Counted from the first letter of the stretch, positions 4,241-39,090 are shown. The stretch: DNA of 64,000 bases from Octopus sinensis (GCF_006345805.1 NC_043023.1:21267140-21331139); one strand, 5' to 3'. The notes: generated by a model not told the origin, from the sequence alone. A program made the numbers and translations.

Positions 4241-4267
4241 CACACACACACACACATATATATATAT

Positions 4268-5311
4268 ATCATCATCATCATCATCATCATTTAGCGTCCG
4301 TTTTCCATGCTAGCATGGGTTGGACGGTTCAACTGGGGTCTGGGGAGCCCGATGGCTGCACCAGGCCAGTCAGATCTGGCAGTGTTTCTACAGCTGGATG
4401 CCCTTCCTAACGCCAACCACTCCGAGAGTGTAGTGGGTGATTTTATGTGCCACCGACACAGGTGCCAGACGAGGCTGGCGAACGGCCACGCTCGGATGGT
4501 GTTTTTATGTGCCACCGACACAGGTGCCAGACGAGGCTGGCAGACGGCCACGCTCGGATGGTGTTTTTATGTGCCACTGACACAGGTGCCAGATGAGGCT
4601 GGCGGACGGCCACGATCGGATGGTGTTTGTTACGTCCCCAAAGCACGGAGGCCAGTCTATGCGGTACTGGCTACAGCCACGTTCGGATGATTTTCTTGTG
4701 TGCCACCGGCACTGGTACCACAAAGATACAAATTCCATTGATGTTCATCTATTTTGATTTGATTTGATTTGATTTGATTTGATTTGATTTGATTTTCACT
4801 TGCCTCAACAGGTCTTCACAAGTGTCACAGGAAGGAAGGAAGGTATGCACAGGTGGACTGGTACCACAAAGATACAAATTCCATTGATGTTCATCTATTT
4901 TGATTTGATTTGATTTGATTTGATTTGATTTTCACTTGCCTCAACAGGTCTTCACAAGTGTCACAGGAAGGAAGGAAGGTATGCACAGGTGGACTGACTA
5001 CGTCCCAAGTAGGGGCCACGGGTTATGGCCTGACTAGTCTTGCCGGGTCTTCGGTTGGTGTTTTTATGTGCCACCGACACAGGTGCCAGATGAGGCTGGC
5101 GAACGGCCACGATCGGATGGTGTTTGTTATGTGCCCACGTCACAGAGGCCAGTCGATGCGGTACTGGCTACGGCCACATTCGGATGGTTTTCTTGTGTGC
5201 CAACGGTACTGGTACCACAAAGATACAAATTCCATTGATGTTCATCTATTTTGATTTGGTTTGATTTGATTTGATTTGATTTGATTTGATTTTCACTTGC
5301 CTCAACAGGTC
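4268..5311 (-). mobile_element. Non-coding RTE-3'UTR-derived element with internal 62-bp and ~330-bp tandem repeats
   Basis: (CAT)n then reverse complement of the RTE tail; 62-bp units start at 4445, 4507, 4569; (GATTT)n blocks; closely matches 31722-33311. Confidence 0.85.
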
Positions 5312-8399: not shown

Positions 8400-8586
8400 A
8401 TGTTAGTGTGTGTCCCCAACTGCTAATTGATAACCGGTGTTGGTGTATTTGCATCCCTGTTACTTAGCACTTAAGCAAAAGAGGGCTAGAGGTTGCTGCT
8501 CATCAGACAGAAAAGGTACCACACATAAAAGACAAAATCAAGGAGGAGCCCCAGCATGGCCACAGTCTCATGACTGAAACAAGCAG
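8400..8586 (+). mobile_element. Degraded SINE family B body and tail
   Basis: ACCGGTGTTGGTGTATTTGCATCCCTGTTACTTAGC...CCCCAGCATGGCCACAGTC..ATGACTGAAACAAG. Confidence 0.7.
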
Positions 8587-9905
8587 AAGAGAGAAAGAAA
8601 AAGAAAGAGAAAAAAGAAGAGAGGAAGAGAAAAATAGAAGAAAGAAAAGAAAATATAGAGAGAACTATAGAGAAGACGAAAAGAGAAAAGAAACAGAGAA
8701 AGAGAGAGAGAAAAAAAGAGAGAAAAGATAAAGAGAATGAGATTGGAAAAAGAAAACGAGAGAGAAAAGAAAGAGAGAAATGAATGAGTGGGAGAGAGGA
8801 AGAAGGATAAAAATAAAACGAGAGGGAGAAAGAAGGAGAGAAAAGCGAGAAAAGAAAGAGAGAAAAGAAAGAGAGAGAGAAAAAGAAACAAGAGGAAGAA
8901 AGAGATGAAGAAGGGGGGGGGAGAAAGAGAGAAAAGAAAGAGAGAAAAGAAAGAGAGAAAAGAAAGAGAGAGAGAGAGAAAAAAAGAGAGAAAAGAAAGA
9001 GAGAGAGAAAAGACAATGAGGAAATGAGAGAGAAAGAGAGAATAGACAAAGAAAACGAGCGAAAGAGTGAAAAGAAAAAGATAGAGAGAGATAGGGAGAA
9101 GGAAAAGCAGAAAATAAAAAGAGAGAGAAAAGAAGCAGAGAGGGAGAGAGCGAGAATAGAAAAAGAGGAAGAGAGAAAGATGGAAGGTAAGAGAAGAAAA
9201 AGGGACTGAGAGAAATAAAGAGAGAAAAAGGGAGAGAGAGAGAGAGAGGAAGAAAGAGGAAAAACAAACAGTGAAAGAGAGAGAAATGAGAAAGAGATGG
9301 ATAACGAGACGAAAAAGGGATAAAGAGAATGAGAGAAAAGAAAGAGGGAGAAAGAGAGAAAAGAAAGGGAGAAGGCAGGAGAGGAGAGAAAAGAAAGAGG
9401 GAGAAAGAGAGAAAAGAAAGTGAGAAGGCAAGAGAGGAGAGAAAAGAAAGGGAGAAAGAGAGAAAAGAAAGTGAGAAGGCAAGAGAGGAGAGAAAAGAAA
9501 GAGGGAGAAGAGAGAAAAGAAAGTGAGAAGGCAAGAGAGGAGAGAAAGAAAAAAGTAAGTCCCTTAAAGGGAGAAAAGGAAAAGAGGGAAAGAAAAGAAA
9601 AAGGAAATGACAAAGAGACAGAGAAAGAGAGGGAGAGGGAGGAAGAGAGAAAAAGAGAAGAGAAAAATTGCCAGAGAAAAGAGATAACAGAGAGAAAGAG
9701 GAAGAGAGAGACAAAGAGAGAAAGAGGGGGAAAAAAGGAGAGAGATAAAGAAGAGAGAAAAGTAAAGCAGGAGAGAAAGTGATAAAAGAAAAGAGAGATA
9801 AAAAGAGAGGAAGGAAAGAAAGAGAAAGAGAGAACAAATACTAAGAGACATAGAGAGAGAGAAAGATAGAAAGGAAAATGTGAGAGAGAGAGGAAAAGAA
9901 AAGAG
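8587..9905 (+). repeat. ~1.3-kb GA-rich polypurine tract
   Basis: Almost only A/G on the plus strand, with a ~45-nt unit (GAAAGTGAGAAGGCAAGAGAGGAGAGAAAA...) repeated about 9355-9545. Confidence 0.95.
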
Positions 9906-11335: not shown

Positions 11336-11533
11336 TTGGATATTCGGAACAAAAATAAAATGACACCATTGCTTGAAGCCGTTTCCCGGGGTCACCTCGG
11401 AATGACACACAAGCTAATAGCCCTGGGTGCAAGCATAAATGCTGTTGATGGTGAAGGTAACAGCTGTTTGCACCTTGCCATGGAAACAGAAGTGTTTAAT
11501 TCCGAGGGTGCACCCATGGATTTACTAAACGAA
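11336..11533 (+). CDS. Ankyrin-RING-Death protein, ankyrin exon
   Basis: LDIRNKNKMTPLLEAVSRGHLGMTHKLIALGASINAVDGEGNSCLHLAM... (two ankyrin repeats); CAG at 11333-11335, GTAAGT at 11534; phase 0-0. Confidence 0.9.
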
Positions 11534-13202: not shown

Positions 13203-13378
13203 TGCTGCACTGCCACCAACCTAAAAAAGAAAAGAAGTCTCTCTGGTATAGTGGTTGCGAGATATCTCGCCAGCCAGGGAGCTGACTTTCACCATAAAAA
13301 CAACAAAAATAACAGACCATTGGACCTCATTAAGGACCCAAATTTGAGAAAAAACTTAGAAACATTTTTACAACCACA
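13203..13378 (+). CDS. Ankyrin-RING-Death protein, last ankyrin exon
   Basis: CCTATNLKKKRSLSGIVVARYLASQGADFHHKNNKNNRPLDLIKDPNLRKNLETFLQP; AG 13201-13202, GTAAGT 13379; resembles the final MIB2 ankyrin. Confidence 0.88.
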
Positions 13379-14091
13379 GTAAGTATTTCCTGGCTATGGA
13401 ACGGATAAACCAGTACATTTCCTATTTTGTATATAATCATATTTATATGTTTATTTCGTTTCAATTCTACGATATACATTATACTGTCGCTAGTGTCTTT
13501 GTCAAAGGCCACACAATAAACAATATGCAGTTGTTAGGAGATCAAAGAAAGAACACGATTTTGATTACATTCACATGATTCGTAGTGTTGACATTTATAC
13601 TTCACTGTCCACCCCCACCTACTCCTCTTCGTTCCCTATTTTAAAGATTTGTGATCAATAGGAAAATATAGATCTAAATAATGAAGTGAATGAATTCCAT
13701 TTTGAAACTGTTACTTAGAATTAAGTGGAATTTATCTGTCTACCAACAACTTTTTCTCACTCTTCTAAGTCCGAATCAGTCAATATTTCAAATGATTTCA
13801 TAGAAAAATAACCTACAAACACACACCAACAGTGTATATATTATATTTCTGCAAATACTGATGGAATATTGCCACATATCTTCATAGAAGAAAAAAAACT
13901 GCCTGGAAACGTAAATAATTCAAGTAACACATATACCATTACTAGGTGTTTTAGTCGCCTTTCACTCCCGTATTTTATAAGATTTGGCAATTTCTTTGCC
14001 ATACATCTCTCTGTATTTGCTACTTAAGAAGCAGACACATTTCCCCCTTAGTGAATATACAAAGCTTTCTTTGTCTGTTGAAATTCAAATA

Positions 14092-15490: not shown

Positions 15491-16219
15491 ATATATATAT
15501 ATATATGATAGATATATCATCCTCATCATCATCATCGTTTAACATCCGTTTTCCGTGCTAGCACGGGTTGGACAAAAATATATATAAGTAATATTCGTAG
15601 GCACGCCAACATGAATATCTGTTCGAATGGACTCTACTGTGAATGTTTAACCCCAAGAGAACACCTCCTCTAGCTAATTAACGATGCAAAGGTGCATCCG
15701 ATTAATTGCGAGCAGGGGATCAAACCCCTACCATCTTATAGCAACAGGACCAGCAGACCAGGTCTGGTTTCGGGCTATTCCTGCCACTCTACAGTACTGG
15801 AACCTTCTTCTGCTAATCTGTGGTGACGAAATGTATATAATAAAGTATGTGTATATAAAGAAACCTGTGTAGATATATTTGTTCAGAAGAAATGAGTTCG
15901 ATGTTAGAAGTGAAATATATTTCTGGAATATATGTAGTTCACTGTGTGTCAACCAATTTCTATGATGTATCAGGGTCAAGACAAACATTTATCAATGTAT
16001 GTATGCATGTGTGTGTATGTATGTATGTGTGTGTGTGTGTGAGCATGCCATTTAACTACACAAATATCTGTATGTATGTAATTGTTTAAAGAAGAATTTC
16101 TGCTCTACTCTTGGTAGTTACTGATGTATCTTATAATATTCTCTATTCCGAACATGTAAATAATGTAATATTTGTTATAAATGAATGTTATTGATTGGAT
16201 GTTTCTGTTTTGTCCACAG

Positions 16220-16362
16220 ATGTTTGCTGTGCAGAAATAAAGCGGCCACAACAAAAGTTCATCCCTGTGAACACCTTCTGACATGTGAAGAATGTTCAAA
16301 CATTCCACTTCAACAATGTCTGAAGTGTTTAAAACCTGTAATAACAGGCAGAGGTCGAGTTG
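16220..16362 (+). CDS. Ankyrin-RING-Death protein, RING-HC exon
   Basis: CLLCRNKAATTKVHPCEHLLTCEECSNIPLQQCLKC = C-x2-C-x11-C-x-H-x3-C-x2-C-x7-C-x2-C; CAG acceptor, GTAAGA donor; phase 2 to 1, matching the previous exon. Confidence 0.92.
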
Positions 16363-17457
16363 GTAAGAATATTCTTTGCTGATCTGTCTGTTTGTCCTCA
16401 TTGTCCCACTGCCCTTATTGTGTAGAATAATATACTTCATGTTGTTATGTAGGCAGAGGTCTGCCATAATCTGGCAGATTTATGATAAAAGGTGTTCCTA
16501 GTGTCTGTTCTCTGTAATAGTATATCTCTCACACTACATACACTAAACATTGACCTTATCCAAGTAGGAAACATGTCACACTTCAAGAGGGTTGTAGTCT
16601 GCAACATAAAGATAATGGAGGATTCTGCAAGATAATTAGTGAGTAACTGAAGTATCAATAAATCTCCATCAACACTATAATTAATTATGAGTTGTTAGAA
16701 GATAAGTAAATACAACAGTACTTACAAGGACATCAGTGTCATCTTTGGTAAAGTATTAAATTCAGTAGAATATTTTAAAGGAGTAAAATTAGATGTCACT
16801 AGTTTGAGAGACTTTAACACACAATTCCATGTTGTTATGTTTGTAATTGGAGGATATTAAGGCTAATAGAGACAGTTTTGTTTGTCAAGCAACCAGATCA
16901 TGAAACCTTCAAATATATCCTGAATGAGATGACATTCTGGTGAACTGTGAAGTTAAAATTAGGAATTATCAGCAACAATGTTTAACAAAGAGATTAGGTG
17001 TATGTTTCTCCTTCTTGAAGTGGTTGTGACATGTGTTTGTTGTTATATCTTTGATAAATAAATTTGTTGACACTGGAATTAAACAGGTTGTTAGTGAAGA
17101 TCAGGGTTTTGAAAATGCAATAGATTTGGCATAGATATAAGCAAGGAAACCAAAACCTACAGATAAACTGTTATTAAGTGATAATTAAGTGATATAATTA
17201 CAGCATTGTTAGATTATGTAGGATATCTTAACAGAGAGAGGAAATTTACAAAGATCAACTAGAGTTCGTTTCGGAGCTAAATATTGGCTATAACATGGGT
17301 CCACTGTTGAAAGTATAAAAATATTGACCAAAAGCATTATGATCGCTTGTTGGCCATTGATGATATGAATGTCTCTCAATAATAAAATATAGATTATTAA
17401 TAAATATAAAGGGATTGTGCTATAAATAAATATAAAACTTGGAAACACATATTTCAG

Positions 17458-17508
17458 AGAGTCCAAAGTTTGAAGAGAAGGGAGTGCAGACTGTGGCAGA
17501 GACAGTTG
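17458..17508 (+). pseudogene. Exon copy 1 (ESPKFEEKGVQTVAETV); homologous donor reads AT
   Basis: Acceptor ...CATATTTCAG intact; 51 nt, open, phase 1-1; followed by ATGAGTTT where paralogues have GTGAGTAT. Confidence 0.7.
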
Positions 17509-18944
17509 ATGAGTTTAAAATTAGAGAACTTAATTAATTTCTATAGATTTTATATTCACCTCAGCTATTTTGCTTATTAGAATGGTGGAGAACAAATCCC
17601 ATTTCTAATTTCCATTTGAAAGGTTAGCTCTAAAGTAATTGTATTAAAAATATTACCGAAATTTCATAAAGTCGGGGTTAACATGTTTGGTAAAATGGAT
17701 AAATTAAAAGCCACAATAGAGTTAATATTGTCTTCTGGAAGAGGGAACTATAATTTATTATTATTTTTAGGTGTAAACTCGTGAGTTAAGATAGTTGTTT
17801 GTTTTTCTACTAAGATCTTTCGTAAGTTTTCTGATAGGTTATTCTTGATGTTGTTATGTAGCCAGATGTCTGTCGTAATATGTTGTATTTTCTGGGGCTG
17901 TGTACCCTGAATGTCTGTGGTAAGAATACATTTTGTTGTTGCAAATTAGAAAATTCTAATTAAATATTAACTCTGTATAAGAATATTCATCATGAACTTA
18001 ATTTTATTAAATGTTAAATTTGGTATTGAACCGTGAACATCTGTTTGCATTTAAACAAATTATTGGTGTTTATACAAAATATACAAACGGAAATTGAATA
18101 TAACTTGAATGCACAAATCCTTGTTTGTAACTATATATAATATACACTTATTACATTGTTTGAACAACATTTACCATCCATATAGTCATTCTTTTTCTCA
18201 CTCTTGTTAGATTTTAGATGATATTAATGCTAAAAGAGGCACAGTTTTCTGAGTGTTTCACCCTTTGGTCTTGATTGTTGCGTTCAAATTATTTAATGAA
18301 AGATAGTCATTGTTATTTGACCAGGAAATGAATTAATCATTAGTATTTGGCAGTGGACTTGGTTATATCTTTCTTCGTTTGCTCATGGAACTACCATAAT
18401 ATTAGCTGTGCTGAGACACAGTCATATTCATAGTAATGAAGGCTATATGTTCTTTACTCAGATTATATACAATCTATATTGCTATCTAGTATTGCACCGT
18501 CAAGCACAGTGCCATTGTATCACATATATACCCAATTATCATGATAATTAATAAGCTATAATTCATTAACTCTCTTACATTTGTATGTATGAAATGTAAA
18601 CTTATTTTGTCATAGGGACATCGTGTACCATCACATTACATTTTATATCTTGTTAGGGATCTTGTTGGGGAAGGGTGTATGGAATTTGGCTTGTGGAGAT
18701 GTTTTGTAGGGGACAGATTGTGTGCGGGGTGGAGGGTATGCACATAAAGGACATGTCTTTATGGGCTCAGTTTTACTTAATTAGAGAGGAATGTTGATTA
18801 GTGAATTCTAGAGATGAGAGGACAGTGCCATGCCATAGATTTGGCAGAGTTATAAGAAAAGAAAGACAATGCTAAGAGAAAACTCTTATCAAGTGTTAAT
18901 TAAATGAGATAATTGGTACATTGTTAGAATATTTAATGTCTTCT

Positions 18945-18981
<37 letters not shown>

Positions 18982-19201
18982 GGTGGATTTAGAAATGTTA
19001 GTCTGTTTTATTGTGGACATATTGGGCTATTACATGGGACCACTGTAGAAAGTACAGAAATATTGACCAAAACCATAATGGTCAACATTTGACCAGTAAC
19101 GACAGGAATTGAATGTCTCACAATAACAAGGTAGTGCTTAATAAAAATAAAGATAAAGAAAGTTTATTTTTAAATGTAAAACTTGGAAATATTTATTTCA
19201 G

Positions 19202-19279
19202 AGGCTCCAAAGTTTGAGGACAGGCGTGTAAAAACAGAGGCTACATGTCAGGAATTAGGGGCTGCATCTCAGGTAATAG
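19202..19279 (+). CDS. Exon copy 2 (EAPKFEDRRVKTEATCQELGAASQVI)
   Basis: TATTTATTTCAG acceptor, GTGAGT donor, 78 nt, phase 1-1, no stop. Confidence 0.75.
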
Positions 19280-19534
19280 GTGAGTATAAAATAATAGTTC
19301 CCAATTGATTTCTGTAAGGTTTTCTTCCCTCGAGTATATTGTGCTTGAAAGAATAACTGAAAACAGCTTCCATTCCTATTTTCCAATTGAACGATTATCC
19401 GTATAATAATTGAATTAAAGATATCGATTTACTGATAGTTTATGAAATACTCATTGAGGTTAATGCTGTTGGTAATAATGTTCAAATTAGAAGACACGAA
19501 TAGAGTTAATATTGTCATTTGGTGACGGAACGCA

Positions 19535-20372
19535 TCTTCATCATCATCATCATCACCATTGTTTAACGTCCGTTGTTATAGTAGCATGGGTCGGACGATT
19601 TAAATGGCAAGGCAGTAGGCTGCGCCAGGCTCCAATGTGATCTGGCAAGGTTTCCACATATGTATGCCATTCCTAACGCCAACCACCCCGAGAGTGTGGT
19701 GGGTGCTTTTTACATGCCACCGACACAGGAGCCAGTTGAAGTGGGGGCTGGCATTGACCATATTCAGATGGTACTTTTTACGTGCCAACGGCACAGGGAA
19801 CCAGTCAGGCGGCACTGGCCACAAACAACGTTTGATTGTTACTTATTACGTGCCACCGGCACGGGTGCCAGTCAGGCGGCACTGGCATCGGCCATAATTA
19901 CAATTTGCATTTTGATTTCGATCTTCATTTGATTTTGATTTGTGATTTCTGGTTTTTGGTTTTACTTGATTCAGAAATTCTTCTTAAGCGCAACTTATCA
20001 CTCTGTGATTCAAGGGTACTTCTAAAAGGGTCTGGTTATGCGACACTGGTATCGGCTATAGCTGTGATCTCACTTCACTTGCCGGGTCTTCTCAATCACA
20101 TCATATTTCCAGAGGTTTCTGTCTCTTGCCATTGCCTCTGCGAGGCCCAACGTTCGAAGGTCGTTTCACCACGTCATGCCCTGTCTTCCTGGGTCACCCC
20201 TTTCCACAGGTTCCTTCCACTGTTAGGGTGTAACACTTCTTCCCACAGCTCTCCTCATCCATACACATGACCATACCAGTGCAGTTGTCTCTCTTGTACA
20301 CCACATCTGATGCTTCTTATGTCTAACACTTCTCTCAGGCCTCTTCACTCTGCCTTGTGTGCACACTGACAT
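19535..20372 (-). mobile_element. 5'-truncated RTE LINE (ORF end + 3' UTR)
   Basis: (CAT)n tail near 19540; reverse strand encodes IRCGVQERQLHWYGH-like residues; homologous to 3400-4240. Confidence 0.85.
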
Positions 20373-21280
20373 CGTTGCGTTCAAATTATTTAATATAATA
20401 TAGTCATTGTTATTTGACCAGGAAATGAATTAATCATTAGTATTTGGCAGTGGACTTGGTTATATCTTTCTTCGTTTGCTCATGGAACTACCATAATATT
20501 AGCTGTGCTGAGACACAATCATATTGATTGTAATGAAGGCTATATGTTCTTTACTCAGATTATATACAATCTATATTGATATCTAGTATTGCACCGTCAA
20601 GCACAGTGCCATTGTATCACATATATACCCAATTATCATGATAATTAATAAGCTATAATTCATTAACTCTCTTACAGTTGTATGTCTGAAATGTAAACTT
20701 ATTTTGTCATAGGAACATCATGTACCCTCACCTTACATTTTATATTTTGTTAGGGATCATGTTGGGGAAGGATGTGTGCAATTTGACTTGTGGAGATGTT
20801 TTTAGGGGACAGATTGTGTGCGGAGTGGAGGGTATGCACATAAAGGACATGTCTTTATGGGCTCAGTTTTACTTAATTAGAGAGTTGATTAGTGAACTCT
20901 AGAGATGAGAGGACTGTGCCATGCCATGGATTTGGTAGTTATAAGAAAAGAAAGACAAAGCTAAGAGAAAACTGTTATCAAGTGTTAATTAAATGAGATA
21001 ATTGCAACATTGTTAGAATATTTAATGTGTTTTTAGAGAGAGAGAGAGAGAGGAGGGGAGGGTGGATTCAGGAATGCTAGTCTGTTTTATTGTGGACATA
21101 TTGGGCTATTACATGGGACCACTGTAGAAAGTACAGAAATATTGACCAAAACCATAATGGTCAACATTTGACCAGTAACGACAGAAATTGAATGTCTCAC
21201 AATAACAAGATAGAGTTTAATAAAAATAAAGATAAAGAAAGTTTATTTTTAAATGTAAAACTTGGAAATATTTATTTCAG

Positions 21281-21358
21281 AGGCTCCAAAGTTTGAGGAC
21301 AGGCGTGTAAAAACAGAGGCTACATGTCAGGAATTAGGGGCTGCATCTCAGGTAATAG
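21281..21358 (+). CDS. Exon copy 3, identical to copy 2
   Basis: Nucleotide-identical 78-nt exon with intact AG and GTGAGT. Confidence 0.75.
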
Positions 21359-21642
21359 GTGAGTATAAAATAATAGTTCCCAATTGATTTCTGTAAGGTT
21401 TTCTTCCCCGAGTATATTGTGCTTGAAAGAATAACTGAAAACAGCTTCCATTCCTATTTTCTAATTGAACGATTATCTGTATAATAATTGAATTAAAGAT
21501 ATCGATTTACTGTGAGTTTATGAAATACCCATTGAGGTTAGCACTGTTGGTAATAATGTTCAAATTAGAAGACACAATAGAGTAAATTTTGTCATTTGGT
21601 CACAAGTATAATCAAGTATAATCTTGGAAATATTTATTTCAG

Positions 21643-21690
21643 CAAGGCCAATATTTGAAGACAAAGAGGTCCAGACAGTAGAAGAGCCAC
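21643..21690 (+). CDS. Exon copy 4 (ARPIFEDKEVQTVEEP), weak donor
   Basis: TATTTATTTCAG acceptor; the homologous donor is CTGAGT at 21694, but a GT at 21691 keeps phase 1 (48 nt). Confidence 0.5.
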
Positions 21691-22639
21691 GTGCTGAGTA
21701 TAGAATGACATTACATAATTGATTTCTATAAAGTTTAGCTTTTACTGAGCTATTTTGGTCAATAGAATGACCGAGAACAGATACCACTGCTACATTTTAT
21801 TTGAATGCTTAGCTATAAAGAAATTCTGTTCTTCTACAACAACATGAATATCCAATAAATGTACTTTATGCAAACATCTGTTACTCATTCACTCGCAGAA
21901 AGAAAGATACAAACATTAAATATAAACCCTGAAACGGTTCTCTCCCGTTAAGGAGAATATTCGCCCTGTTTGTCATCTCATTGTACTCATTCATTCTCTC
22001 TCTCTCACTCATGCTCTTTCTCTCCGTCTTTTCAAGAAAGATGCTGGTTAAAAGTTTCAATACAATAAATGATATCATCTTCATCTTTTCTCATCTGCTC
22101 TCCATGCTCCCATACACTAGGTGGGTCATCACTGTCCAAGTCAGTTGTATCTGAAATTACTGCCAACCGTCATTTGTTGAGGAAAACATCTCACTTAAAC
22201 ATTGCAGCTTTTCTAAGGTGGTAGACCCTTTCTAACCCCAACCACTTTATAAAGGGTCCTGGGTATATTTTATTGTTGCACAAGCATTAGAAATGATCAT
22301 CAATTCCCCAACAATATCAAACGTTCCTTTCAAACTTGTGGTGTCATCTTTCCTAGTTTCCACCAACCACTTCCTAGTGTGTTCTGGGAGCATTTAATTA
22401 TAGCACAAGTAGTAATCAAGTTGTGTTACATTCTATATAATTAGACGGTCCTCACTATTCTATGATGTTTTGGTTCACTGAAGCTGATGACATTTTCAGG
22501 AGGTGAGAAGGGAATGTGATGACAAAAGTATCAGGATGCGGGGAGAGAAATTTGCAATACCCCCTCTCCTGGCTGTGGGGTCTTTGTCTTACATGTCTTT
22601 TGGCTAAATATGCCAGTACTTGTGCTTTATAAAAAGGGG

Positions 22640-22817
22640 CCACGTACACTTTGTGAGGTGGTTGGCATCAGTAAGAGCATCCTACAGTAGAAAACCATGC
22701 AAAAGAAACCATCTGGGGCCTGGTGCAGTTGTCTGGCTTGTCAGATCCTGTCAAGATTTCCAACCCATTCCAGCTTGGAAAACAAATTTTGAATATTGAT
22801 GATGAGGATGATGATGC
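22640..22817 (+). mobile_element. Degraded RTE-type 3' tail
   Basis: GAGGTGGTTGGCATCAGTAAGAGCATCC..GTAGAAAACCATGC...(GAT)n. Confidence 0.6.
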
Positions 22818-23721
22818 TGTCTTCCAGTAACTCATCATAATTCTTTGTCTTAGATTGTTACAGTAGTTTCCTGTCTGGTATAACATATTAGCTCAGTATA
22901 ATAATATTGATTGTGAAAACCGGTTCAGTGATTTTGATAACATTCATATTGAACAGAGAACATATGTTCACATTTGAACAAAACATTGATGCTAGCATAT
23001 GCAATACATGGAAAGGAATGAACGTATGAGATTCCAGTGTGACTTGAACTTACAACACTTTTCTAACTATATATATATAATTATCGCTTGTTACGATGTT
23101 TGTATAACGTTTACTGTCCATATATAGACATCGTTATACTGAAAATTGTTGGCTTTGAGATGGTTTCAATTGTAAGAGAGTCACTGTTTTCAGTCTTCCA
23201 CATTTTGGTTTTACTTCCGACTTGATTGTTCTGTTGAAATTAGATCATGGAACCTGGTCATTGTTATTTGACCAAGAAAAGAATTCATCATTAGTATTCA
23301 GTACTGGAAATGGTTACATTTTTCTATGGTTTCTCATGGAACTACCATAATATCAACTGTGCTGAGACACAACCATATTAATTGTAACAAATGTCACATG
23401 TTCTTCACACAGATTTTATACAATCTATATTGATAGTTAGTGTTTATACGCTGCATTAACATGATAATTAATCAGCTATCATCCATTAACTCTCTTAAAC
23501 TTGTCTGTCTGAAAGTTTCATAGCATTATCTTGTACCCTCATCTAATATTTTACACCTTATTACCCTCAAAGTAAACATAACTTTTACATGGGTACACAA
23601 CCACATCCCTACGAACTAGTTTTACAGCTGTATGCCCTTCCCACAATAATAAAGTGTTGATTATCAATAACTATAATGAAATTATACTATAAAACGTAAA
23701 GCTTGAAAATATTCATTTCAA

Positions 23722-23769
23722 AGACTCCAACTTCTGTGAAGGATGCCTTAACAACATCACAGCCAGTTA
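23722..23769 (+). pseudogene. Exon copy 5 (ETPTSVKDALTTSQPV); homologous acceptor reads AA
   Basis: ATTCATTTCAA instead of ATTTATTTCAG; donor GTGAGT intact at 23770; 48 nt, open. Confidence 0.65.
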
Positions 23770-24649
23770 GTGAGTAGCAAATAACAGTACCTCATGGATT
23801 TCTATAAATTTAACCTTCACCTGAGTATTTGTAGTTTATCAGAATGACTGAGGACAAGATCCATTCCTAATTTACATCTGAAATATTAGCTGTATAATAA
23901 TTCTATTAGACATTTTGATATCAATGGAATTTCACAAAATATCCAACGGGGTTGGCATGGTTCGGAAAATGGATAATTTAGAAGACAATAGAATTAATAC
24001 TGTATCTTAAAACGGAAGACTAAAATATGTAGTTACTAAGTTTACTGATAGGTTATTGCTGTTGTTGCTATTTAGGCAAATATCTCTCATAATGTGACAG
24101 ATTTACAATGAAATGTGTTCCTTGTGTGAACACCCTGCCTTTTTTTTTTGACTGATAATAAATTTATCATTACATCCCCTAAACATTGTCTTTATCCATG
24201 TAAAAGTATTAGGTTTGATGTTGAGACAACCGTCCTCTCTCTCTCTCTCTCCAAGATAGACACTGATGACCCTCATCATTTATCATCTGATGTCTATGCT
24301 CCTATCGATTGGATGGATGATTCCTATCCATGTCAGTTCTTATTAACAAATACTGTCCGCCTCGATTGGATGAGGAACACATTCCGGCTTTTCTATGGTG
24401 ATGTGCCTTTCCTAACATCAACCACTTTAAAAAGGGCCTTGGGCACAATTTTGCTCCAAAAGCACTAGAAAAATTGTCGTCAACAAAATTAACGCTCCTC
24501 TTTAACTTCTACACGGAAATTCTGTTTGCAGATACTGAAAACAGAAAGCTAACATACAATAAAGATGAACTGGATGGATATATGCTGGAGATCCAAAGCA
24601 AAAGCAGTGATTCCCATTCATAGACAGTTTGAAATGTCCATTGAAACCA

Positions 24650-25420
24650 GCAATCAAATACCGATTGATTAGTTCAGACTAATTTCAACCTTGAATATAA
24701 ATGGCGAGATTTACAAGGTTGTACTCACAAAGAGATCAACTGTAAATCTACAGAATAATGAATATGGGACTAAAAGTATCTTGAAGACTGGAATCCTCTG
24801 GCATTCCAGGCTGTGTGGAACATGTGTCTTAAATCTTGGATGTGATACAAGACGGAAAGAAGAATAAAAGGGATTGAATGTTGTGTGATTTGATCTGGTT
24901 TATGGTTCTCTAGCAAACAAATTGTTGATGGAAGCAGTGGACCTGTTTTATATATGAGAAAAGATTAAGGATCTGATGAGGAGCTGCTATAACAATTTCA
25001 ATATGCAGTTCATGAGGAAAACTTTCTCGATAGACTGGTATCATTTTGAAACGGGAATTGCTGTAGTTTCTACAAAATCAGTCATTTGGTTTGTGATTGT
25101 TATGGAGATGTTACTTAAATCAGCAGATTGATAAGAAATGGCTCAAAGGAAAACACTCGAGAAGACATTAATGGATTACATAACAATAGTAACAACAAAT
25201 AAAAGGATATGCAAATAGTTCTGGATTAACTGGGTAGACTGAGGAACTTGGTGAAGAATGTGCTTCAATGCAAATGGGTAATGAAGCCCGTCATTTGTGA
25301 AAGGTCAGCAGAAACAAGTGAAGGTCAAAATAGCAGGAGAAACCCTGATGAAGTTTAAAGGGAAACTTGAAAAACTATTACGACGATGGTAAACTACCTA
25401 ATTTTGCAATAATAGTAAAG
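24650..25420 (+). mobile_element. Old HERO-like RT domain remnant
   Basis: Decayed GIP.HS..CGTC, NVV.FDLVYGSL, KIKDLMRSCYNNF, DWYHFETGIAV, TLMDYITI motifs in RT order. Confidence 0.6.
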
Positions 25421-26286
25421 GCATTGAGATCATGTCACAGAACGAAGATGGGTTAAAAGAAATAAATATGCCAAACATTCTGGAAAATAAAAGATTTGGA
25501 GCTCGCACTTTGTATTCCCGTGTTTCTTATATATTTTTGAGTATCAGTCCTTTTGTACCATTTCAGATGTCTTCACTGCATTAATGTGTAGATGTCCAGT
25601 TGTATGTAGTTAATGGGGTTTTGTACAAGTGTGCAGTGTTTTAGGACACCTGATATCACTTTTTGTTTCATCTGTGGAGAACTGATCATTGCTCACCTTT
25701 ATTAAGGAGTCTTAAAATATTCCCTGCATCTGATAATGACCAGGTGATCTGGGATGTAGGATGATAAAATTCAAGATTTTCCAACAGCAAAGAGAACTGG
25801 TATTACGTTTATTTTACTTGAAGTGGTGTGTCATGCATTTGTGACGAGATCTTTGGAGACCACATTGGATGATATTGCACTTTAGCAGAAGATGAGGAGA
25901 ATGGTGGTTAGTGAAGTCTAGAGTTTAGAGGACAGTCGCATGTCATAGATTTGGTTCAGATATATGAAAGGAGAGATAGAACTATGAGAAGAAACAGTCT
26001 CATGAAATGATAATTAAATGAAATAATTGCAACATTGTTAGATTATGTAGGATGTCTCTGTTAAAGAGAAACAAAGTTTCGGAAAGTTAGTCTATTTTGT
26101 TGCGGGCCTAAATATTGAGCTATTACCTGGTCCCACAATGGAAAGTATAAAAATACTGAGCAAAACCCTAGTGGTCACCAGCCAACCACTGATGATAACA
26201 ATGTCCCACAACAATAAACTACAGAATATTTATAGAGATAAATAAGTTTTACAATAAATTGTAAAACTTGGAAATATTTATTTCAG

Positions 26287-26358
26287 AGAGTCCAGTTCTG
26301 AAGGAGAGGAATCTGATGAGAGTGGCTAAGAGGTTAGGAAGTGATTGGTGGCAAGTGG
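26287..26358 (+). CDS. Ankyrin-RING-Death protein, Death domain exon 1 (ESPVLKERNLMRVAKRLGSDWWQV)
   Basis: TATTTATTTCAG acceptor, GTGAGT donor, 72 nt, phase 1-1; supplies the L..VA..LG.DW..V motif. Confidence 0.88.
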
Positions 26359-27229
26359 GTGAGTATATTTGATTTCTATATATTTTACTTTCACCTCATC
26401 TATTTTATTTGTCAGAATGAATGAGAACAAGTTACATTCCTCATTTCCCATTGATAGGTTATCTGTATGACAATTTTATTTACGATATTCCTGATATTTC
26501 ATAAAATATCCACTGAGGTTAGCATGGTTAGTAATAATGGATAAACTAGAAAATAGAAATGGCGTTTAATATTATCTTTTGGAAGAGGGAACTAAAATCT
26601 ATTGTTTAAGGGTAAACAGGTGAGTGAATTTGTTTTACATTTTCTTTAGGTTCACTGTTAGGTTATTGTAATGAAGGACAAGTACCAAAGTTAACATCTA
26701 AAACAAAGCATCTTTCTTCAAACAGAAGACTTTGAGTTTGGTTCTTCTTGCAGCCATTATTTATTGGGTTATTGTGTTGGAAGCTGATAATTCCAATTTA
26801 GATTGTCATTTTGTAATGACTTTACCACATGACATATGTCTGTAAATGCTTCAATAAAAAGAGATTTAATAAAGGTGACACAGCGAAATCCTATCATTCT
26901 CCTCAGGCGAAAACAGAGAATTCCTTTAAGGGAATTTACCAGAAAATGAACTGGAGGTGGCATCTCTCATTGAGACTGACATAATAATAACTGAATAGGC
27001 TCTGTAGAATTGATTGAACCTGGAGTTCATTGGAGAAGTTTGAAATGGGTTGAATTTGACTTAGAATTATCGACTGTTGGACAATCACTGATCATTCGAT
27101 TTTTAGTGTCCTCTTGGGAACTTTGCAAGGTAGTAGATGGCACAGAGGGACAGTACTTTCATGACCCTTTGAATACCAGGTCTGAAATCTACCAGAATAA
27201 GACAGATATATGGGATTCCTCTAAAGGGT

Positions 27230-27560
27230 CTTTGGAGTAATGTTACTCAATAGGATTTATAGTTCAGAGATCTGGGAGTCTCTCCAGGTTGAGCCACGTC
27301 TCCTCCACATCTGTGGTACCTCGGACATGTGATCAGGGTGTTGCAGGAATGAATTACAGGACATGTTCTCAAAGTCAAACCAATGGAACAGGATACCGAG
27401 GGGGAGGCCAAGAAAGAAATGGTTGGATGATATCCATAGTCTTAGTTCTTCACATCATAGAATACAAGCAGAATGTCTAATGATGGATGCTTCTGATAGG
27501 ACCCTATGGAGGAGGTGCCTGAGGACTCTTTCCCCACAGCCCTTTCAAGAATATTGAGCA
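27230..27560 (+). mobile_element. Decayed RTE-type LINE C-terminal fragment
   Basis: LWYLGHVIRV ... PRGRPRKKWLDDI. Confidence 0.65.
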
Positions 27561-27908
27561 GAGGAAATGGATGGATCATATGCTTTCACTGTTGGAGGTC
27601 AATGTTAATTCTTGAGGTTCTGATATACTTTTGCCTTCACAAAAGTTTTCCTGCCCTCGTTTACCATATATTTTCTCAAGTATAATTTTCAATTAATTTT
27701 CTTTAAAAATCTCGTTTAATTCAAACTCTTTGTTATTTTTGTCAATAGAAAACAATGTCTTATATTTTTCCTGTTTCTTAGCTATTTCTTTTTTGATTTC
27801 TCTAATGATAAAGTTTGTTTGTTATATTCATAACAACCTACAGTACACAGCGTTTTATGTTATTGTCAGTGTTGTTGCATTTATTTCTTATTGTTGTGTC
27901 TTTTGCAG

Positions 27909-28108
27909 CTATTTTTTTAGGAGTTGATACAACTGAACTGAAAATTGATGATGAGTCTATTGACACTGTAAAACAAGGCTACCTGATGCTTCGCGAATGG
28001 TTCAAAAATTGCGACCCAGAAACACGGACACACGCAACATTACGTGCAGCTCTTGAAGAAGCTGAATGTTTCACTGCGATGGAATGTCTGTCATTAGACG
28101 CAAAGTGA
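27909..28108 (+). CDS. Ankyrin-RING-Death protein, terminal exon (AIFLGVDTTELKIDDESIDTVKQGYLMLREWFKNCDPETRTHATLRAALEEAECFTAMECLSLDAK*)
   Basis: TTTTGCAG acceptor at 27907-27908; Death-domain signatures FLG, Q.Y.ML..W, T...L..AL; TGA at 28106-28108. Confidence 0.9.
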
Positions 28109-31721: not shown

Positions 31722-33308
31722 ATCATCATCATCATCATCATCATCATTTAACGTCCGCTTTCCATGCTAGCATGGGTTGGACGGTTCAACTGGAGTCTGG
31801 GGAGCCCGAAGGCTGCACCAGGCCAGTCATATCTGGCAGTGTTTCTACAGCTGGATGCCCTTCCTAACGCCAACCACTCCGAGAGTGTAGTGGGTGATTT
31901 TATGTGCCACCGACACAGGTGCCAGACGAGGCTGGCGAACGGCCACGCTCAAATGGTGTTTTTTATGTGCCACCGACACAGGTGCCAGACGAGGCTGGCA
32001 GACGGCCACGCTCGGATGGTGTTTTTATGTGCCACCGACACAAGTGCCAGATGAGGCTGGCGAACGGCCACGATCGGATGGTGTTTGTTACGTGCCCACA
32101 GCACGGAGGCCAGTCGATGCGGTACTGGCTACGGCCACGTTCGGATGGTTTTCTTGTGTGCCACCGGCACTGGTACCATAAAGATACAAATTCCATTGAT
32201 GTTCATCTATTTTGATTTGGTTTGATTTTCACTTGCCTCAACAGGTCTTCACAAGTGTCATAAGAAGGAAGGTATGCACAGGTGGACTGACTACGTCCCA
32301 GGTAGGGGCCACGGGTTATGGCCTGACTAGTCTTGCCGGGTCTTTGGATGGTGTTTTTATGTGCCACCAACACAGGTGCCAGATGAGGCTGGCGAACGGC
32401 CACGATCGGATGGTGTTTGTTACGTGCCCACAGCACGGAGGCCAGTCGATGTGGTACTGGCTACCACCACGTTCGGATGGTTTTCTTGTGTGCCACCGGC
32501 ATTGGTACCACAAAGATACAAATTCCATTGATGTTCATCTATTTTGATTTGTTTTGATTTGATTTGATTATGATTATGATTATCACTTGCCTCAACAGGT
32601 CTTCACAAGTGTCATTTGATTTGATTAGATTAGCACTTGCCTCAACAGGACTTCACAAGTGTCATAAGATGGAAGGTATGCACAGGTGGACTGACTACAT
32701 CCCAGGAAGGGGCCACGGGCTATGGCCTGACTAGTCTTGCCGGGTCTTCGGACAGGTGCCAGATGAGGCTGGCGAACGGCCACGATCGGATGGCGTTTGT
32801 TATGTGCCCACAGCACGGAGGCCAGTCGATGCGGTACTGGCTACAGCCACGTTCGGATGGTTTTCTTGTGTGCCACCGATACTGGTACCACAAAGATACA
32901 AATTCCATTGATGTTCATCTATTTTGATTTGGTTTGATTTTCACTTGCCTCAACAGGTCTTCACAAGTGTCACACACTTGCCTCTGCCTCAACAGGTCTT
33001 CACAAAGTGTCACACACTTGCCTCTGCCTCAACAGGTCTTCACAAGTGTCACACACTTGCCTCAACAGGTCTTCACAAGTGTCATAAGAAGGAAGGTATG
33101 CACAGGTGGACTGACTACGTCGCCGGGTCTTCGGATGGTGTTTTTATGTGCCACCGACACAGGTGCAAGATGAGGCTGGCGAACGGCCACGATCGGATGG
33201 TGTTTGTTGTGCCCACAGCACGGAGGCCAGTCGATGCGGTACTGGCTACGGCCACGTTCGGGTGGTTTTCTTGTGTGCCACCGTCACTGGTACCACAAAG
33301 ATACAATT

Positions 33309-33311
<3 letters not shown>
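31722..33311 (-). mobile_element. RTE-3'UTR-derived element with nested tandem repeats (about four higher-order units)
   Basis: Same 3 x 62-bp block as 4268-5311 (31902, 31965, 32027), then recurring GATACAAATTCCATTGATGTTCATCTATTTTGATT...CACTTGCCTCAACAGG units. Confidence 0.88.
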
Positions 33312-33367
<56 letters not shown>

Positions 33368-33754
33368 CATACGTACATACATACATACATAAATACATAC
33401 ATATATAGGTGTATATACCCACACACGCATATATACTATCTAAAACAAAATAATCACCTGATCAAGTCCAAAGGTTTGTACTAGATATTGTTATTACTTT
33501 ATATAGTTGTGGCGTGTAATTAAATGTAAAATATAAGCTAGTCAATGTTTATTTGTTAAAGGTATCAGCAGAAGCTTGCATGCGTATGTGTGTCTGTTGG
33601 TGCGCCAATGCTCGTGTCCCCTTCGCAAGCGAAAAACGAGCCCGTTTCAATTCGAAACTGTCACGTCGGTTTTATATGACTAAGATGTTATTTTTTAGTT
33701 ATCTCCCTTAATTAAAGAATATACACTTTTGGCACTATTTGCTCTTTTAATCTC

Positions 33755-35854: not shown

Positions 35855-36090
35855 GAGACGCAATGGCCCAGTGGTTAGGGCAGCGGACTCGCGGTTTCGA
35901 TCCCCAGACCAGACGGAAACTGAAAGAAGCCTGTCGTATATGTATATGTATATGTGTGTGTCTGTGTTTGTCCCCCCAACATCGCTTGACAACTGATGCT
36001 GGTATGTTTACGTCCCCGAACTCACAACGTAACGACAAACGAAATACCGCAAAGCATTTCGCCCGGCGTGCTAACGATTCTGCCAGTTCG
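35855..36090. mobile_element. Chimeric SINE remnants (family A head, family B body, inverted family C head)
   Basis: GGAGACGCAATGGCCCAGTGG; CGGAAACTGAAAGAAGCC; reverse complement of GGCGAACTGGCAGAATCGTTAGCACGCC. Confidence 0.65.
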
Positions 36091-36099
36091 CCACAAATC

Positions 36100-36600
36100 T
36101 GTAAACTCTGTTGTTGAAGACATGGGAATTGCCGATTATCTGGTTGAGTTCTTAAACTCACTGGATCCACAACGAGCTCCCCCTCGTTGCCTTCGATTGA
36201 AAATGAGCGCTCCAATCATGCCTCTGCAGACCTTTTCCCAACCGAAGCTGTGCAGTGGTACAAGAATTGTTGTGAAGAAATTAACGAGAAATATCATAGA
36301 AGCCACAATAATTTTTGTCTTTGGAAAAGGTGAAGATATATTTATGCCTCACTTAATTTTAATACCTTCAAATATTCGCATCGAATTCAAACGACTTCAA
36401 TTTCCAATACGTCAGTCTCTTGCGATGTCCATTGATAAGTACCAAGATCAGACTTTCAAAGTTACTGCTTTGCAATTAGAGAAGGGTTGTTTTTTTACAA
36501 AGACATATGCTGGGGTTCCAGAGTGGGGAGCAAAGACAATTTTATCATTTTCACCCCTACAGGTAAAACTCAAACCAATGTCTGTTAGGACGTTTTTAGC
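36100..36600 (+). mobile_element. Helitron PIF1-like helicase C-terminal fragment
   Basis: EFLNSLDP..PP..L.LK, KLCSGTRIVVKKL.RNIIEATI, EFKRLQFPIR.SLAMSIDK.Q motifs in ORF 35996-36631. Confidence 0.85.
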
Positions 36601-36847
36601 ATGGGATCAACGAACAAGATTTGCAGAATGAATAAAAACTTTGAATTGAAATTGTCAACGCAACACTATATTCGCATAAGAAAATGTATTTCTATTTTTT
36701 GCTTGTTGTAATACTTAAGTTCAATAATTCTGTTGTTTCTGGAGAGAATCCTTTTCGTTTTGTGCCTTATTATGTAAAACACTCACCGGTAAAATTCCCA
36801 CTTTTTTCTTATTTTTATTGTCCTAAAATTTTCGTTGCGTCTTGCAA

Positions 36848-38930: not shown

Positions 38931-38937
<7 letters not shown>
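38303..38937 (-). mobile_element. 5'-truncated RTE LINE
   Basis: (CAT)n tail; reverse ORF ...WYSHVLRMDE...GRGRPRKTWNEVIKHDLRALGL. Confidence 0.88.
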
Positions 38938-38970
<33 letters not shown>

Positions 38971-39090
38971 ACAATCAAGGAACGACCATAATAGGCCATT
39001 CACCCACTAGAAATAACAGCCAAAGCTTCAACCGCAAATAAAGATTAATTCCGTAAACAGGAGAAAATTTTAAAAAACATTTACCCTGTA

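What the first reader, a model, noticed from the sequence alone, without database searches (positions are those of the whole stretch)
16363..26660. Array of phase-1 exons copied from the first Death-domain exon, between RING and Death domains
Seen: six paralogous intron modules share AAACTTGGAAATATTTATTTCAG and long flanks; each has a 48-78 nt symmetric exon starting E/A-S/A/R/T-P. Copy 6 encodes Death helix 1-2 (ESPVLKERNLMRVAKRLGSDWWQV); copies 1-5 align to it (e.g. ESPKFEEKGVQTVAETV) but have turned polar and lost the Trp core, with no stops. Inference: exon duplication converted a domain exon into a modular linker whose length could vary by splicing, tuning RING-to-Death spacing.
Basis: partly seen in the sequence, partly recalled or inferred. 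Interest (0 to 1): 0.8.

Follow-up and report, generated by a model that had tools for sequence, protein, structure and literature searches.

The report
Duplicated Death-exon cassettes forming octopus linker
In an octopus ankyrin-RING-Death-domain gene, the small exon that starts the Death domain was copied several times within one intron, and the copies now encode a floppy spacer of variable length between the two domains; this is a clean but ordinary example of tandem exon duplication.

Summary
The repeat array is real. Six homologous intron-exon-intron modules lie between the RING exon (16220-16362) and the second Death exon of an Octopus sinensis 'MIB2-like' gene (XP_029652189.1, which maps 100% to the window). 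The sixth module carries the genuine first Death-domain exon (26287-26358). BLAST alignments run through the exons, so the mini-exons descend from that exon.

Only copies 2 and 3 (19202-19279, 21281-21358) have intact AG/GT sites, and both are already in the RefSeq model. Copy 1 has an AT donor, copy 4 a CT donor and copy 5 an AA acceptor.

A 98-99.5% identical inverted twin locus about 40 kb away has four A-type copies and five predicted isoforms. Many Octopus paralogues have isoforms that differ by exactly one 16-18 or 26 aa cassette.

Cassette bodies change about as fast as the intron, while the splice flanks are nearly invariant. AlphaFold2 predicts the cassette stretch as disordered next to a confident Death fold.

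Verdict: tandem exon duplication turned a fold-encoding exon into frame-neutral linker cassettes. The idea that this tunes RING-to-Death spacing is untested. It is a new member of a known kind, of moderate interest.

The parts
11360..11533 (+). First annotated coding exon (ankyrin repeat) of the gene, XP_029652189.1
   Evidence: tblastn of P0003, 100% identity; Pfam Ank and Ank_4
13203..13379 (+). Second ankyrin-region coding exon
   Evidence: tblastn of P0003, 100%
16220..16362 (+). RING (zf-C3HC4_3-type) exon. It ends in phase 1 with donor G|GTAAGA. The 9.9 kb array intron starts after it
   Evidence: Sequence; tblastn; Pfam PF13920 at 25.9 bits, just under its cutoff of 27
16907..17762 (+). 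Module 1: intron flanks plus copy 1
   Evidence: Aligns with the copy 6 module 25711-26606, E 4.5e-93 for the 670 nt core
17458..17508 (+). Copy 1, 51 nt, ESPKFEEKGVQTVAETV. Acceptor CAG is intact but the homologous donor is ATGAGT, so it is probably a dead pseudo-exon in this gene. It is in no RefSeq model here or in the twin locus
   Evidence: The same AT donor is present in L002 and L001. Related exons with GT donors are used in other paralogues (VGPNSSKMEVQMVAGPV)
18274..21600 (+). About 1.6 units of a ~2.08 kb tandem duplication (18274-20370, then 20371-~21600), each with one A-type cassette. The first unit also holds a SINE-like insert at about 19524-20370
   Evidence: the repeat finder families D1, D3, D4, D5, D10 and D12, 93-100% identity, spacing 2078-2097. 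The twin locus has two more units
19202..19279 (+). Copy 2, A-type cassette, 78 nt, EAPKFEDRRVKTEATCQELGAASQVI. CAG acceptor, G|GTGAGT donor, phase 1-1. It is a coding exon of the RefSeq model
   Evidence: P0003 residues 165-190, 100%; splice sites
21281..21358 (+). Copy 3, A-type cassette, identical in sequence to copy 2. It is a coding exon of the RefSeq model
   Evidence: P0003 residues 191-216, 100%
21643..21693 (+). Copy 4, B-type cassette, 51 nt, ARPIFEDKEVQTVEEPR. Acceptor is intact, the homologous donor is CTGAGT, and an alternative weak donor C|GTGCTG gives 48 nt. Its upstream flank is truncated to about 25 nt. It is not in this gene's model
   Evidence: The same exon with the same CT donor is annotated in isoforms X1, X3 and X5 of the twin locus. 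Paralogue L004 has GTGAGT here
23722..23769 (+). Copy 5, C-type cassette, 48 nt, (E)TPTSVKDALTTSQPV. The acceptor is mutated to CAA and the donor GTGAGT is intact. It is probably a dead pseudo-exon
   Evidence: The CAA is shared by L002, L004 and L005. The intact CAG version in L001 is in model P0016, and a C-type exon is in O. bimaculoides P0021
25711..26606 (+). Module 6: the parental-type module around the real first Death exon
26287..26358 (+). Copy 6, the first Death-domain exon, 72 nt, ESPVLKERNLMRVAKRLGSDWWQV (helix 1 and the start of helix 2), phase 1-1
   Evidence: Pfam Death match starts at residue 226 of P0003. PDB profile hits to the RIPK1 and PIDD Death domains start at profile position 3. 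AF2 helix 223-244
27909..28108 (+). Last coding exon, holding the rest of the Death domain and the stop codon (28106-28108). A second in-frame AG lies 12 nt downstream, which would start the exon at 27921

Best explanation
This is a tandem-exon-duplication array in an Octopus sinensis ankyrin-RING-Death-domain gene. A module of about 0.9 kb was duplicated repeatedly inside the intron between the RING exon and the Death domain, probably by unequal crossing-over. The module holds the phase 1-1 first Death-domain exon with its branch-point/3' splice-site region and its 5' splice site. The original exon still supplies helix 1 of the Death fold, so the copies were freed from fold constraint. They lost the Trp and part of the hydrophobic pattern, became acidic and polar, and diverged into 26-aa (A), 17-aa (B and copy-1 type) and 16-aa (C) cassettes.

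Every copy keeps phase 1-1 and a length divisible by three, so any subset can be spliced in without changing the frame. The result is a disordered RING-to-Death spacer that grows in steps of 16-26 residues.

In this gene the two youngest A copies (copies 2 and 3) are the working cassettes. Copies 1 and 5 are decayed pseudo-exons, and copy 4 is damaged at its donor and of doubtful use. Copy number is still changing through a 2.08 kb unit: two A cassettes here, four in the twin locus.

Shown: the homology, the splice-site states, the RefSeq models and isoforms, the predicted disorder and the Death fold. Inferred: that inclusion really varies in vivo in this gene, and that spacer length matters for function.
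For: The modules are homologous through the exon.

In paralogue L001 the A, B, C and Death-exon modules all have canonical CAG...GTGAGT sites and all four exons are in model P0016. There the Death exon aligns end to end with the A cassette.

P0003 maps 100% to the window and includes copies 2 and 3.

Isoform sets:
- The twin locus has X1-X5, with cassette sets A'A'A'AB, A'A'A'A, A'A'A'B, A'A'A' and A'B.
- The L005 gene has isoforms for all seven non-empty combinations of three A cassettes.
- In other genes, single-cassette differences of 16-18 or 26 aa separate the isoforms.

Splice flanks are conserved while exon bodies are not:
- Between module types: 83% and 78% identity in the acceptor and donor flanks, 51-56% in the exon, 58-64% in the distal intron.
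- Within the A type: 1 of 45 splice-flank columns is variable, against 17 of 78 exon columns and 44 of 262 upstream intron columns.

A cassette in L005 carries a -2/-1 compensated frameshift and is still annotated.

In the AF2 model, residues 160-217 have pLDDT below 50 and no secondary structure, while the Death domain scores about 90. The Death domain is confirmed by profile hits to the RIPK1 and PIDD Death domains (2.9e-8 and 1.5e-7) and by Foldseek (TM 0.74 to 6ac5).

The cassettes are acidic, 15-24% hydrophobic and lack Trp. The Death exon is 38% hydrophobic with two Trp.
Against: All evidence for inclusion comes from computed RefSeq (Gnomon) models, and I saw no transcript reads. The paralogues are so similar that RNA-seq reads could be cross-mapped. 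The B cassette of the twin locus is annotated with a non-canonical CT donor, while a paralogue with an almost identical exon has GT.

Cassette bodies diverge at or above the intron rate, with pN/pS roughly 0.1-1 on very few sites. There is therefore no sign that the peptide sequence itself is selected.

Three of the five extra copies in this gene have mutated splice dinucleotides.

The window is the last 64 kb of the scaffold, behind a 100-N gap, so it may be an uncollapsed haplotype of the twin locus.

The Pfam Death score of this protein, 18.5 bits, is below the 22.6 cutoff.
Confidence: 0.75

Rival explanations
1. The array is real but is not an adaptation. The copies are included only because they inherited good splice signals. 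Inclusion is tolerated because the peptide is disordered and frame-neutral, and the array drifts in number and decays copy by copy. Linker length has no selected role.
For: Exon bodies evolve at about the intron rate. Copies 1, 4 and 5 carry splice-site mutations. One intact A module in L005 (28033) is in none of that gene's eight isoforms. Open frames of this length are common by chance.
Against: The splice flanks are almost invariant across old and young copies. Every annotated cassette preserves the frame, including one with a compensated frameshift. Cassette arrays persist in many paralogues of three Octopus species.
Confidence: 0.3
2. Annotation or assembly artefact. Copies 2 and 3, or the isoform diversity, come from a mis-assembled tandem repeat or an uncollapsed haplotype, together with RNA-seq reads cross-mapped from paralogues. 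The real transcript of this locus has a fixed structure.
For: The window is a terminal piece behind an N gap and is 98-99.5% identical, in inverted orientation, to a locus about 40 kb away. The twin locus has a CT-donor intron in its annotation. The paralogues share near-identical exon junction sequences.
Against: Arrays with different copy numbers and copy-specific substitutions occur on separate contigs and in three species. Isoforms differing by exactly one cassette recur in at least nine genes. Copies 2 and 3 have textbook splice sites.
Confidence: 0.1
3. The cassettes are short interaction motifs rather than an inert spacer. Splicing would then produce a repertoire of binding valencies or specificities in a family of immune or apoptosis-type adaptor E3 ligases.
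For: The A peptide is highly conserved in 18 distinct versions across 29 proteins, with variation concentrated at positions 1, 3-5, 9 and 11-12 and two conserved Cys. All combinations of cassettes are annotated in one gene.
Against: The conservation is explained as well by recent amplification and gene conversion, because the flanking introns are equally or more conserved. The cassettes have no Pfam match and no predicted structure.
Confidence: 0.1

Closest known systems
Internal tandem duplication of symmetric exons that encode disordered, alternatively spliced segments (Schad, Kalmar and Tompa 2013, PMC3632108)
   Same: The exons are phase-symmetric, arise by internal tandem duplication, encode predicted disorder and are alternatively included.
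   Different: Here the parent exon encodes part of a folded domain (Death helix 1-2), and the copies became disordered afterwards. The array also sits in a lineage-specific octopus family with ongoing copy-number change.
Tandem duplicated exon substitution, i.e. mutually exclusive homologous exons (Martinez-Gomez et al. 2022, PMC9741552; Dscam-type arrays, from my own knowledge)
   Same: Adjacent homologous exons have conserved splice contexts and are used alternatively.
   Different: These exons are not mutually exclusive: up to five cassettes occur together with the parental exon in one isoform. The copies do not keep the structural residues of the parent. No docking or selector RNA pairing was found.
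MIB1/MIB2 E3 ligases (the RefSeq name of the gene)
   Same: Ankyrin repeats are followed by a C-terminal zf-C3HC4_3-type RING.
   Different: Pfam finds no MIB/HERC2 or ZZ domain. There is a single RING and a C-terminal Death domain, which MIB proteins lack. The name reflects partial similarity only.
Death domains of RIPK1, PIDD, ankyrins and FADD
   Same: The C-terminal 90 residues match in sequence profile and in predicted fold.
   Different: The Death domain is coupled to a RING through a cassette-encoded linker. The Pfam score of this particular protein is below the cutoff. Its first exon is itself skipped in some paralogue isoforms (P0027).

Membership tests
Tandem-exon-duplication-derived alternative exons | Neighbouring exons in one gene are homologous to each other | tested here: met
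   BLAST alignments run through exon and flanks, E down to 4.5e-93. MAFFT alignments agree.
Tandem-exon-duplication-derived alternative exons | Same intron phase on both sides and a length divisible by three, so inclusion is frame-neutral | tested here: met
   All six copies are phase 1-1, with lengths 51, 78, 78, 51 (or 48), 48 and 72 nt.
Tandem-exon-duplication-derived alternative exons | Functional splice sites on each copy | tested here: not met
   This holds only for copies 2, 3 and 6. Copy 1 has an AT donor, copy 4 a CT donor and copy 5 an AA acceptor.
Tandem-exon-duplication-derived alternative exons | Alternative use in transcripts | tested here: inconclusive
   RefSeq predicted isoforms of the twin locus and of many paralogues differ by whole cassettes. 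This gene has a single model that includes copies 2 and 3. No reads or cDNA were available to me.
Mutually exclusive exon arrays (Dscam-like) | Exactly one member of the array is present in each transcript | tested here: not met
   Models contain 1-5 cassettes together with the parental exon.
Death domain (Pfam PF00531, death-fold superfamily) | Significant profile match | tested here: met
   P0003 scores 18.5 bits, below the 22.6 cutoff, but paralogue P0016 scores 27.7 bits. The family profile hits the RIPK1 Death domain at 2.9e-8 and PIDD at 1.5e-7.
Death domain (Pfam PF00531, death-fold superfamily) | Helical-bundle death fold | tested here: met
   In the AF2 model, residues 218-306 have pLDDT about 86-93. 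The best Foldseek hit is the RIPK1 Death domain 6ac5, TM (target) 0.74 and rmsd 3.1. The E-value is weak (0.07) because the query has several domains.
MIB1/MIB2 E3 ligase family | MIB/HERC2 and ZZ domains plus several C-terminal RINGs | tested here: not met
   Pfam finds only ankyrin repeats, one zf-C3HC4_3 and Death.
Exonised transposable element | The module is dispersed outside the gene as a repeat family | tested here: not met
   The 23-mer and the modules occur only inside this intron of the window and in the same intron of the paralogues. This was not tested genome-wide.

The most novel reading that the evidence does not exclude
The cassette arrays may be a selected diversity generator. 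In an octopus-restricted family of ankyrin-RING-Death adaptors, unequal crossing-over would keep changing cassette number. Recombination inside the array would swap RING-side and Death-side halves between paralogues. Combinatorial splicing would then produce a repertoire of tether lengths or binding valencies used in innate immune or cell-death signalling.
Probability: 0.1. Interest if true: 0.7.

Novelty: new member of a known kind. Interest (0 to 1): 0.4.

Why it matters
The case shows, with intermediates preserved, how an exon that encodes part of a folded domain can be duplicated, released from fold constraint and turned into frame-neutral disordered linker cassettes. What stays conserved is the splice signals and the reading frame, not the peptide.

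It also flags an apparently Octopus-restricted ankyrin-RING-Death family. Its members differ in cassette number, appear to splice the cassettes combinatorially and look mosaic around the array.

That makes a practical system for asking whether linker length between an E3 RING and an oligomerising Death domain matters. The general mechanism is textbook, and the gene models are already in RefSeq.

Tried and rejected
- Intronic RNA gene hidden in the conserved downstream flank: Rfam at E<=1 gave only a sub-threshold mir-297 hit on a (TG)n microsatellite at 16009-16080. RNAalifold on eight downstream flanks gave no consensus pairs.
- Docking or selector RNA pairing between acceptor and donor flanks: considered by eye only, and at most 6-7 AU-rich pairs were seen, so it was not pursued.
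- Tandem Repeats Finder found nothing, because the period of 2.08 kb exceeds its 500 nt limit. The repeat finder was used instead.
- Other genes in the region: no ORF of 90 aa or more on either strand other than TE-like or intronic noise.
- Cassette peptides against Pfam: no match.
- 'No stops' as evidence of selection: rejected as weak.
- MAFFT's first alignment placed the copies' donors opposite the SDW codons of copy 6. This was rejected after L001 showed that the donors are homologous and that copy 6 has about 16 nt deleted just after GTGAGTATA.
- Loci for P0001, P0005 and P0008 were not on record, so the O. vulgaris orthologue's DNA could not be examined.
- Literature searches for this octopus family or for Death-exon duplication found nothing specific.
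Full report
**What the window is.** A protein search with the RING exon, the candidate mini-exons and the Death exons returned only Octopus proteins. XP_029652189.1 (P0003, 'E3 ubiquitin-protein ligase MIB2-like', Octopus sinensis, 306 aa) maps to the window at 100% identity. Its exons are:
- 11360-11533
- 13203-13379
- 16220-16362 (RING)
- 19202-19279
- 21281-21358
- 26287-26358
- 27909-28105, with the stop at 28106-28108

The gene lies at CM016885.1:21278499-21295247, and the window is the last 64 kb of that scaffold. Pfam finds ankyrin repeats, one zf-C3HC4_3 RING and a Death domain. It finds no MIB/HERC2 or ZZ domain, so the RefSeq name reflects only partial similarity.

**The observation.** The quoted 23-mer occurs five times with at most 3 mismatches, against 0 expected. 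A sixth, more diverged copy is at 23699. The module around the real Death exon (25711-26606) gives BLAST alignments that run through the exon:
- copy 1 module: 670 nt, 69.7% identity, E 4.5e-93
- copy 2: E 4.9e-58
- copy 3: E 2.7e-62
- copy 5: E 6e-33
- copy 4: two pieces only, because its upstream flank is truncated to about 25 nt

Copies 2 and 3 sit in a ~2.08 kb tandem unit that is 93-100% identical. All six stretches are open and phase 1-1.

Only copies 2, 3 and 6 have CAG...G|GTGAGT at the homologous splice positions.
- Copy 1 has G|ATGAGT. No GT in phase 1 occurs before the next stop.
- Copy 4 has G|CTGAGT. A weak C|GTGCTG three bases upstream would give 48 nt.
- Copy 5 has CAA for CAG. 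The next AG, two bases on, shifts the frame into a stop.

Open frames of these lengths are not rare in this intron: 35-37% of stretches at 48-51 nt and 21% at 78 nt are open.

**Origin from the Death exon.** In an older paralogue (L001, P0016) the A, B, C and Death-exon modules are all intact. Each has the same AAAACTTGGAAAT.TTTATTTCAG acceptor context and the same GGTGAGTATAAAAT...TTGATTTCT donor context, and all four exons are in the model.
- There the Death exon (DILTLEVKHLHRVSKKLAGKWQQL) aligns end to end with the 26-aa A cassette..AAGTTGGCGGGTAAATGGCAG.. opposite ..GAATTAGGGGCTGCATCTCAG...
- In the window's copy 6, about 16 nt have been lost just after the donor. This misled the first MAFFT alignment.
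- The B and C types lack 27 nt of the A type.
- One paralogue protein (P0077) carries a 24-aa cassette, ESLNLEENRAHSTSKKVAVKQQQV, directly before its real Death exon, ETPKLEERCLQDVAKLLGANWQQV. It looks like an intermediate stage.

The cassettes are acidic, 15-24% hydrophobic and lack Trp. The Death exon is basic, 38% hydrophobic and has two Trp.

**The Death domain.**
- P0003 scores 18.5 bits on PF00531 (cutoff 22.6), and P0016 scores 27.7.
- A profile of six family Death regions hits the RIPK1 Death domain (2.9e-8), PIDD (1.5e-7), ankyrin-3, FAS and FADD in the PDB, starting at profile position 3.
- AlphaFold2 with a 20-sequence family alignment gives pLDDT of about 86-93 for residues 218-306. 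Residues 160-217, which are the RING tail plus copies 2 and 3, score below 50 with no secondary structure.
- Foldseek's best PDB hit is the RIPK1 Death domain 6ac5 (TM 0.74 normalised to the target, rmsd 3.1). PIDD and FADD Death domains also appear.

**Are the cassettes spliced in?** In this gene's only model they are: copies 2 and 3 are coding exons.

A locus 98-99.5% identical to window 8365-31106 lies about 40 kb away in inverted orientation (L002). It has four A-type cassettes instead of two, and the same copy 1, B, C and Death modules. It also has five RefSeq isoforms, with cassette sets A'A'A'AB, A'A'A'A, A'A'A'B, A'A'A' and A'B.

The gene on L005 has eight isoforms, which cover every non-empty combination of three A cassettes. 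In other paralogues of O. sinensis and O. bimaculoides, isoform pairs differ by exactly one 16-18 aa cassette. In some genes the 24-aa Death exon itself is skipped.

From my own knowledge, Gnomon proposes alternative isoforms only with transcript support. I could not see the reads, and cross-mapping between near-identical paralogues is a real risk. The B cassette of the twin locus is annotated with the non-canonical CT donor, while LOC115230672 (L004) has an almost identical B exon with GT.

**Sequence evolution.**
- Between module types, the 30 nt before the exon are 83% identical and the 14 nt after it 78%. The exon bodies are only 51-56% identical and the distal intron 58-64%.
- Among ten A-type copies from four loci, 1 of 45 splice-flank columns varies, against 17 of 78 exon columns and 44 of 262 upstream intron columns.
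- Pairwise pN/pS is about 0.1-1, on very few sites.
- One A copy in L005 has a -2/-1 compensated frameshift (75 nt..CVKKSYMSGLGAASQAI) and is still in four isoforms.

What is conserved is therefore splice competence and reading frame, not the peptide. This fits a spacer, and it fits tolerated neutral inclusion equally well.

**Dynamics.**
- A-cassette number is 2 in the window, 4 in L002, 4 in L005, 1 in L001 and 0 in L004. Across family proteins it ranges from 1 to 4.
- Against L001, the window is 93-96% identical over the RING exon, the copy 1 module and the A module. It is only 66-73% identical over the B, C and Death modules. The paralogues are therefore mosaics with a junction inside the array.
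- The window lies behind a 100-N gap (537-636) at the scaffold end. It may therefore be the other haplotype of L002, in which case 2 versus 4 cassettes is allelic variation.

**Distribution.** A word-indexed search with the Death profile found only Octopus proteins. An exhaustive phmmer search of 1.84 billion representatives with the cassette-less isoform P0020 found 58 proteins at E<=1e-3. Of the ten new hits I looked up, nine were from O. bimaculoides, O. sinensis or O. vulgaris. The tenth was a protein from Argonauta that matched only in the Death region. Many family members have long runs of 17-aa cassettes before the Death exon.

**Mechanism and rivals.** The best explanation is unequal crossing-over that duplicated a symmetric Death-domain exon with its splice signals. 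The copies then lost fold constraint and are used as frame-neutral disordered linker cassettes. Copies 2 and 3 are active here; copies 1 and 5 are decayed and copy 4 is damaged at its donor.

The claim that linker length is functionally tuned is inference only. The main rival is that inclusion is merely tolerated. Artefact and interaction-motif readings are less likely.

**Comparison with what is known.** Symmetric exons that arise by internal tandem duplication, encode disorder and are alternatively spliced are a described class (PMC3632108). Mutually exclusive tandem duplicated exons are a related class (PMC9741552), but they do not fit here because the cassettes co-occur. Searches found no paper on this octopus family or on a duplicated Death exon. 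It is a new member of a known kind. The instructive twist is that the parent exon encoded part of a fold.

**Dead ends.** Rfam found nothing but a microsatellite artefact, RNAalifold found no consensus structure, TRF found nothing and there are no further ORFs in the region. Three paralogue loci were not on record.

Noticed in passing
window 8365-31106 versus L002 (CM016885.1:21214252-21241060); N run at window 537-636: The whole gene region has a 98-99.5% identical inverted twin about 40 kb away that differs by two extra 2.08 kb cassette units. The window is the terminal 64 kb of the scaffold, behind a 100-N gap, so the pair may be uncollapsed haplotypes rather than paralogues.
   Followed up: partly
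window 16220-21600 versus 21600-28105, compared with L001: Mosaic relationship. The RING exon, copy 1 module and A module are 93-96% identical to paralogue L001, but the B, C and Death modules are only 66-73% identical. This suggests recombination or gene conversion with a junction inside the cassette array.
   Followed up: partly
window 19273-19274 and 21352-21353: Copies 2 and 3 contain a second good donor (CAG|GTAATA) 7 nt upstream of the annotated G|GTGAGT. Using it would shift the frame into a stop in the next exon. The A' copies of the twin locus lack it (..CAAGCAATAG).
   Followed up: no
window 27905-27921: The last exon has two in-frame acceptors 12 nt apart (gcag|CTATTTTTTTAG|GA). RefSeq uses the upstream one, which adds AIFL.
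   Followed up: no
L004 (LOC115230672) and other paralogues; proteins P0027, P0033: In some predicted isoforms the first Death exon itself is skipped. Such a protein would lack helix 1 of the Death domain.
   Followed up: partly
L005 28033 and 32738: One A module with intact splice sites (..ELGDTSQAI) is in none of the gene's eight isoforms. Another A module has a compensated -2/-1 frameshift and is used.
   Followed up: partly
window 832-3156 (+): A 775-codon open frame with endonuclease and reverse-transcriptase domains (RVT_1, 2.9e-30), which is a non-LTR retrotransposon. Further TE-like ORFs lie around 7.1-8.2 kb and 56-58 kb.
   Followed up: partly
window 35990-36628 (+): Open frame with a Pif1 helicase 2B domain (1.9e-8), probably a Helitron-type fragment.
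   Followed up: no
window ~8400-9900: Strongly purine-rich low-complexity stretch (GC skew 0.59, AT skew 0.61) that reads as K/E/R-rich frames.
   Followed up: no
window 4240-5260, 19524-20370, 31750-33480, ~38320-39000: Copies of a SINE-like repeat that begin with (CAT)n...TTTAACGTCCG. One copy is part of the 2.08 kb cassette unit.
   Followed up: no
window 16009-16080: Sub-threshold Rfam mir-297 hit (33 bits against a gathering score of 90) on a (TG)n/(TATG)n microsatellite, almost certainly spurious.
   Followed up: yes
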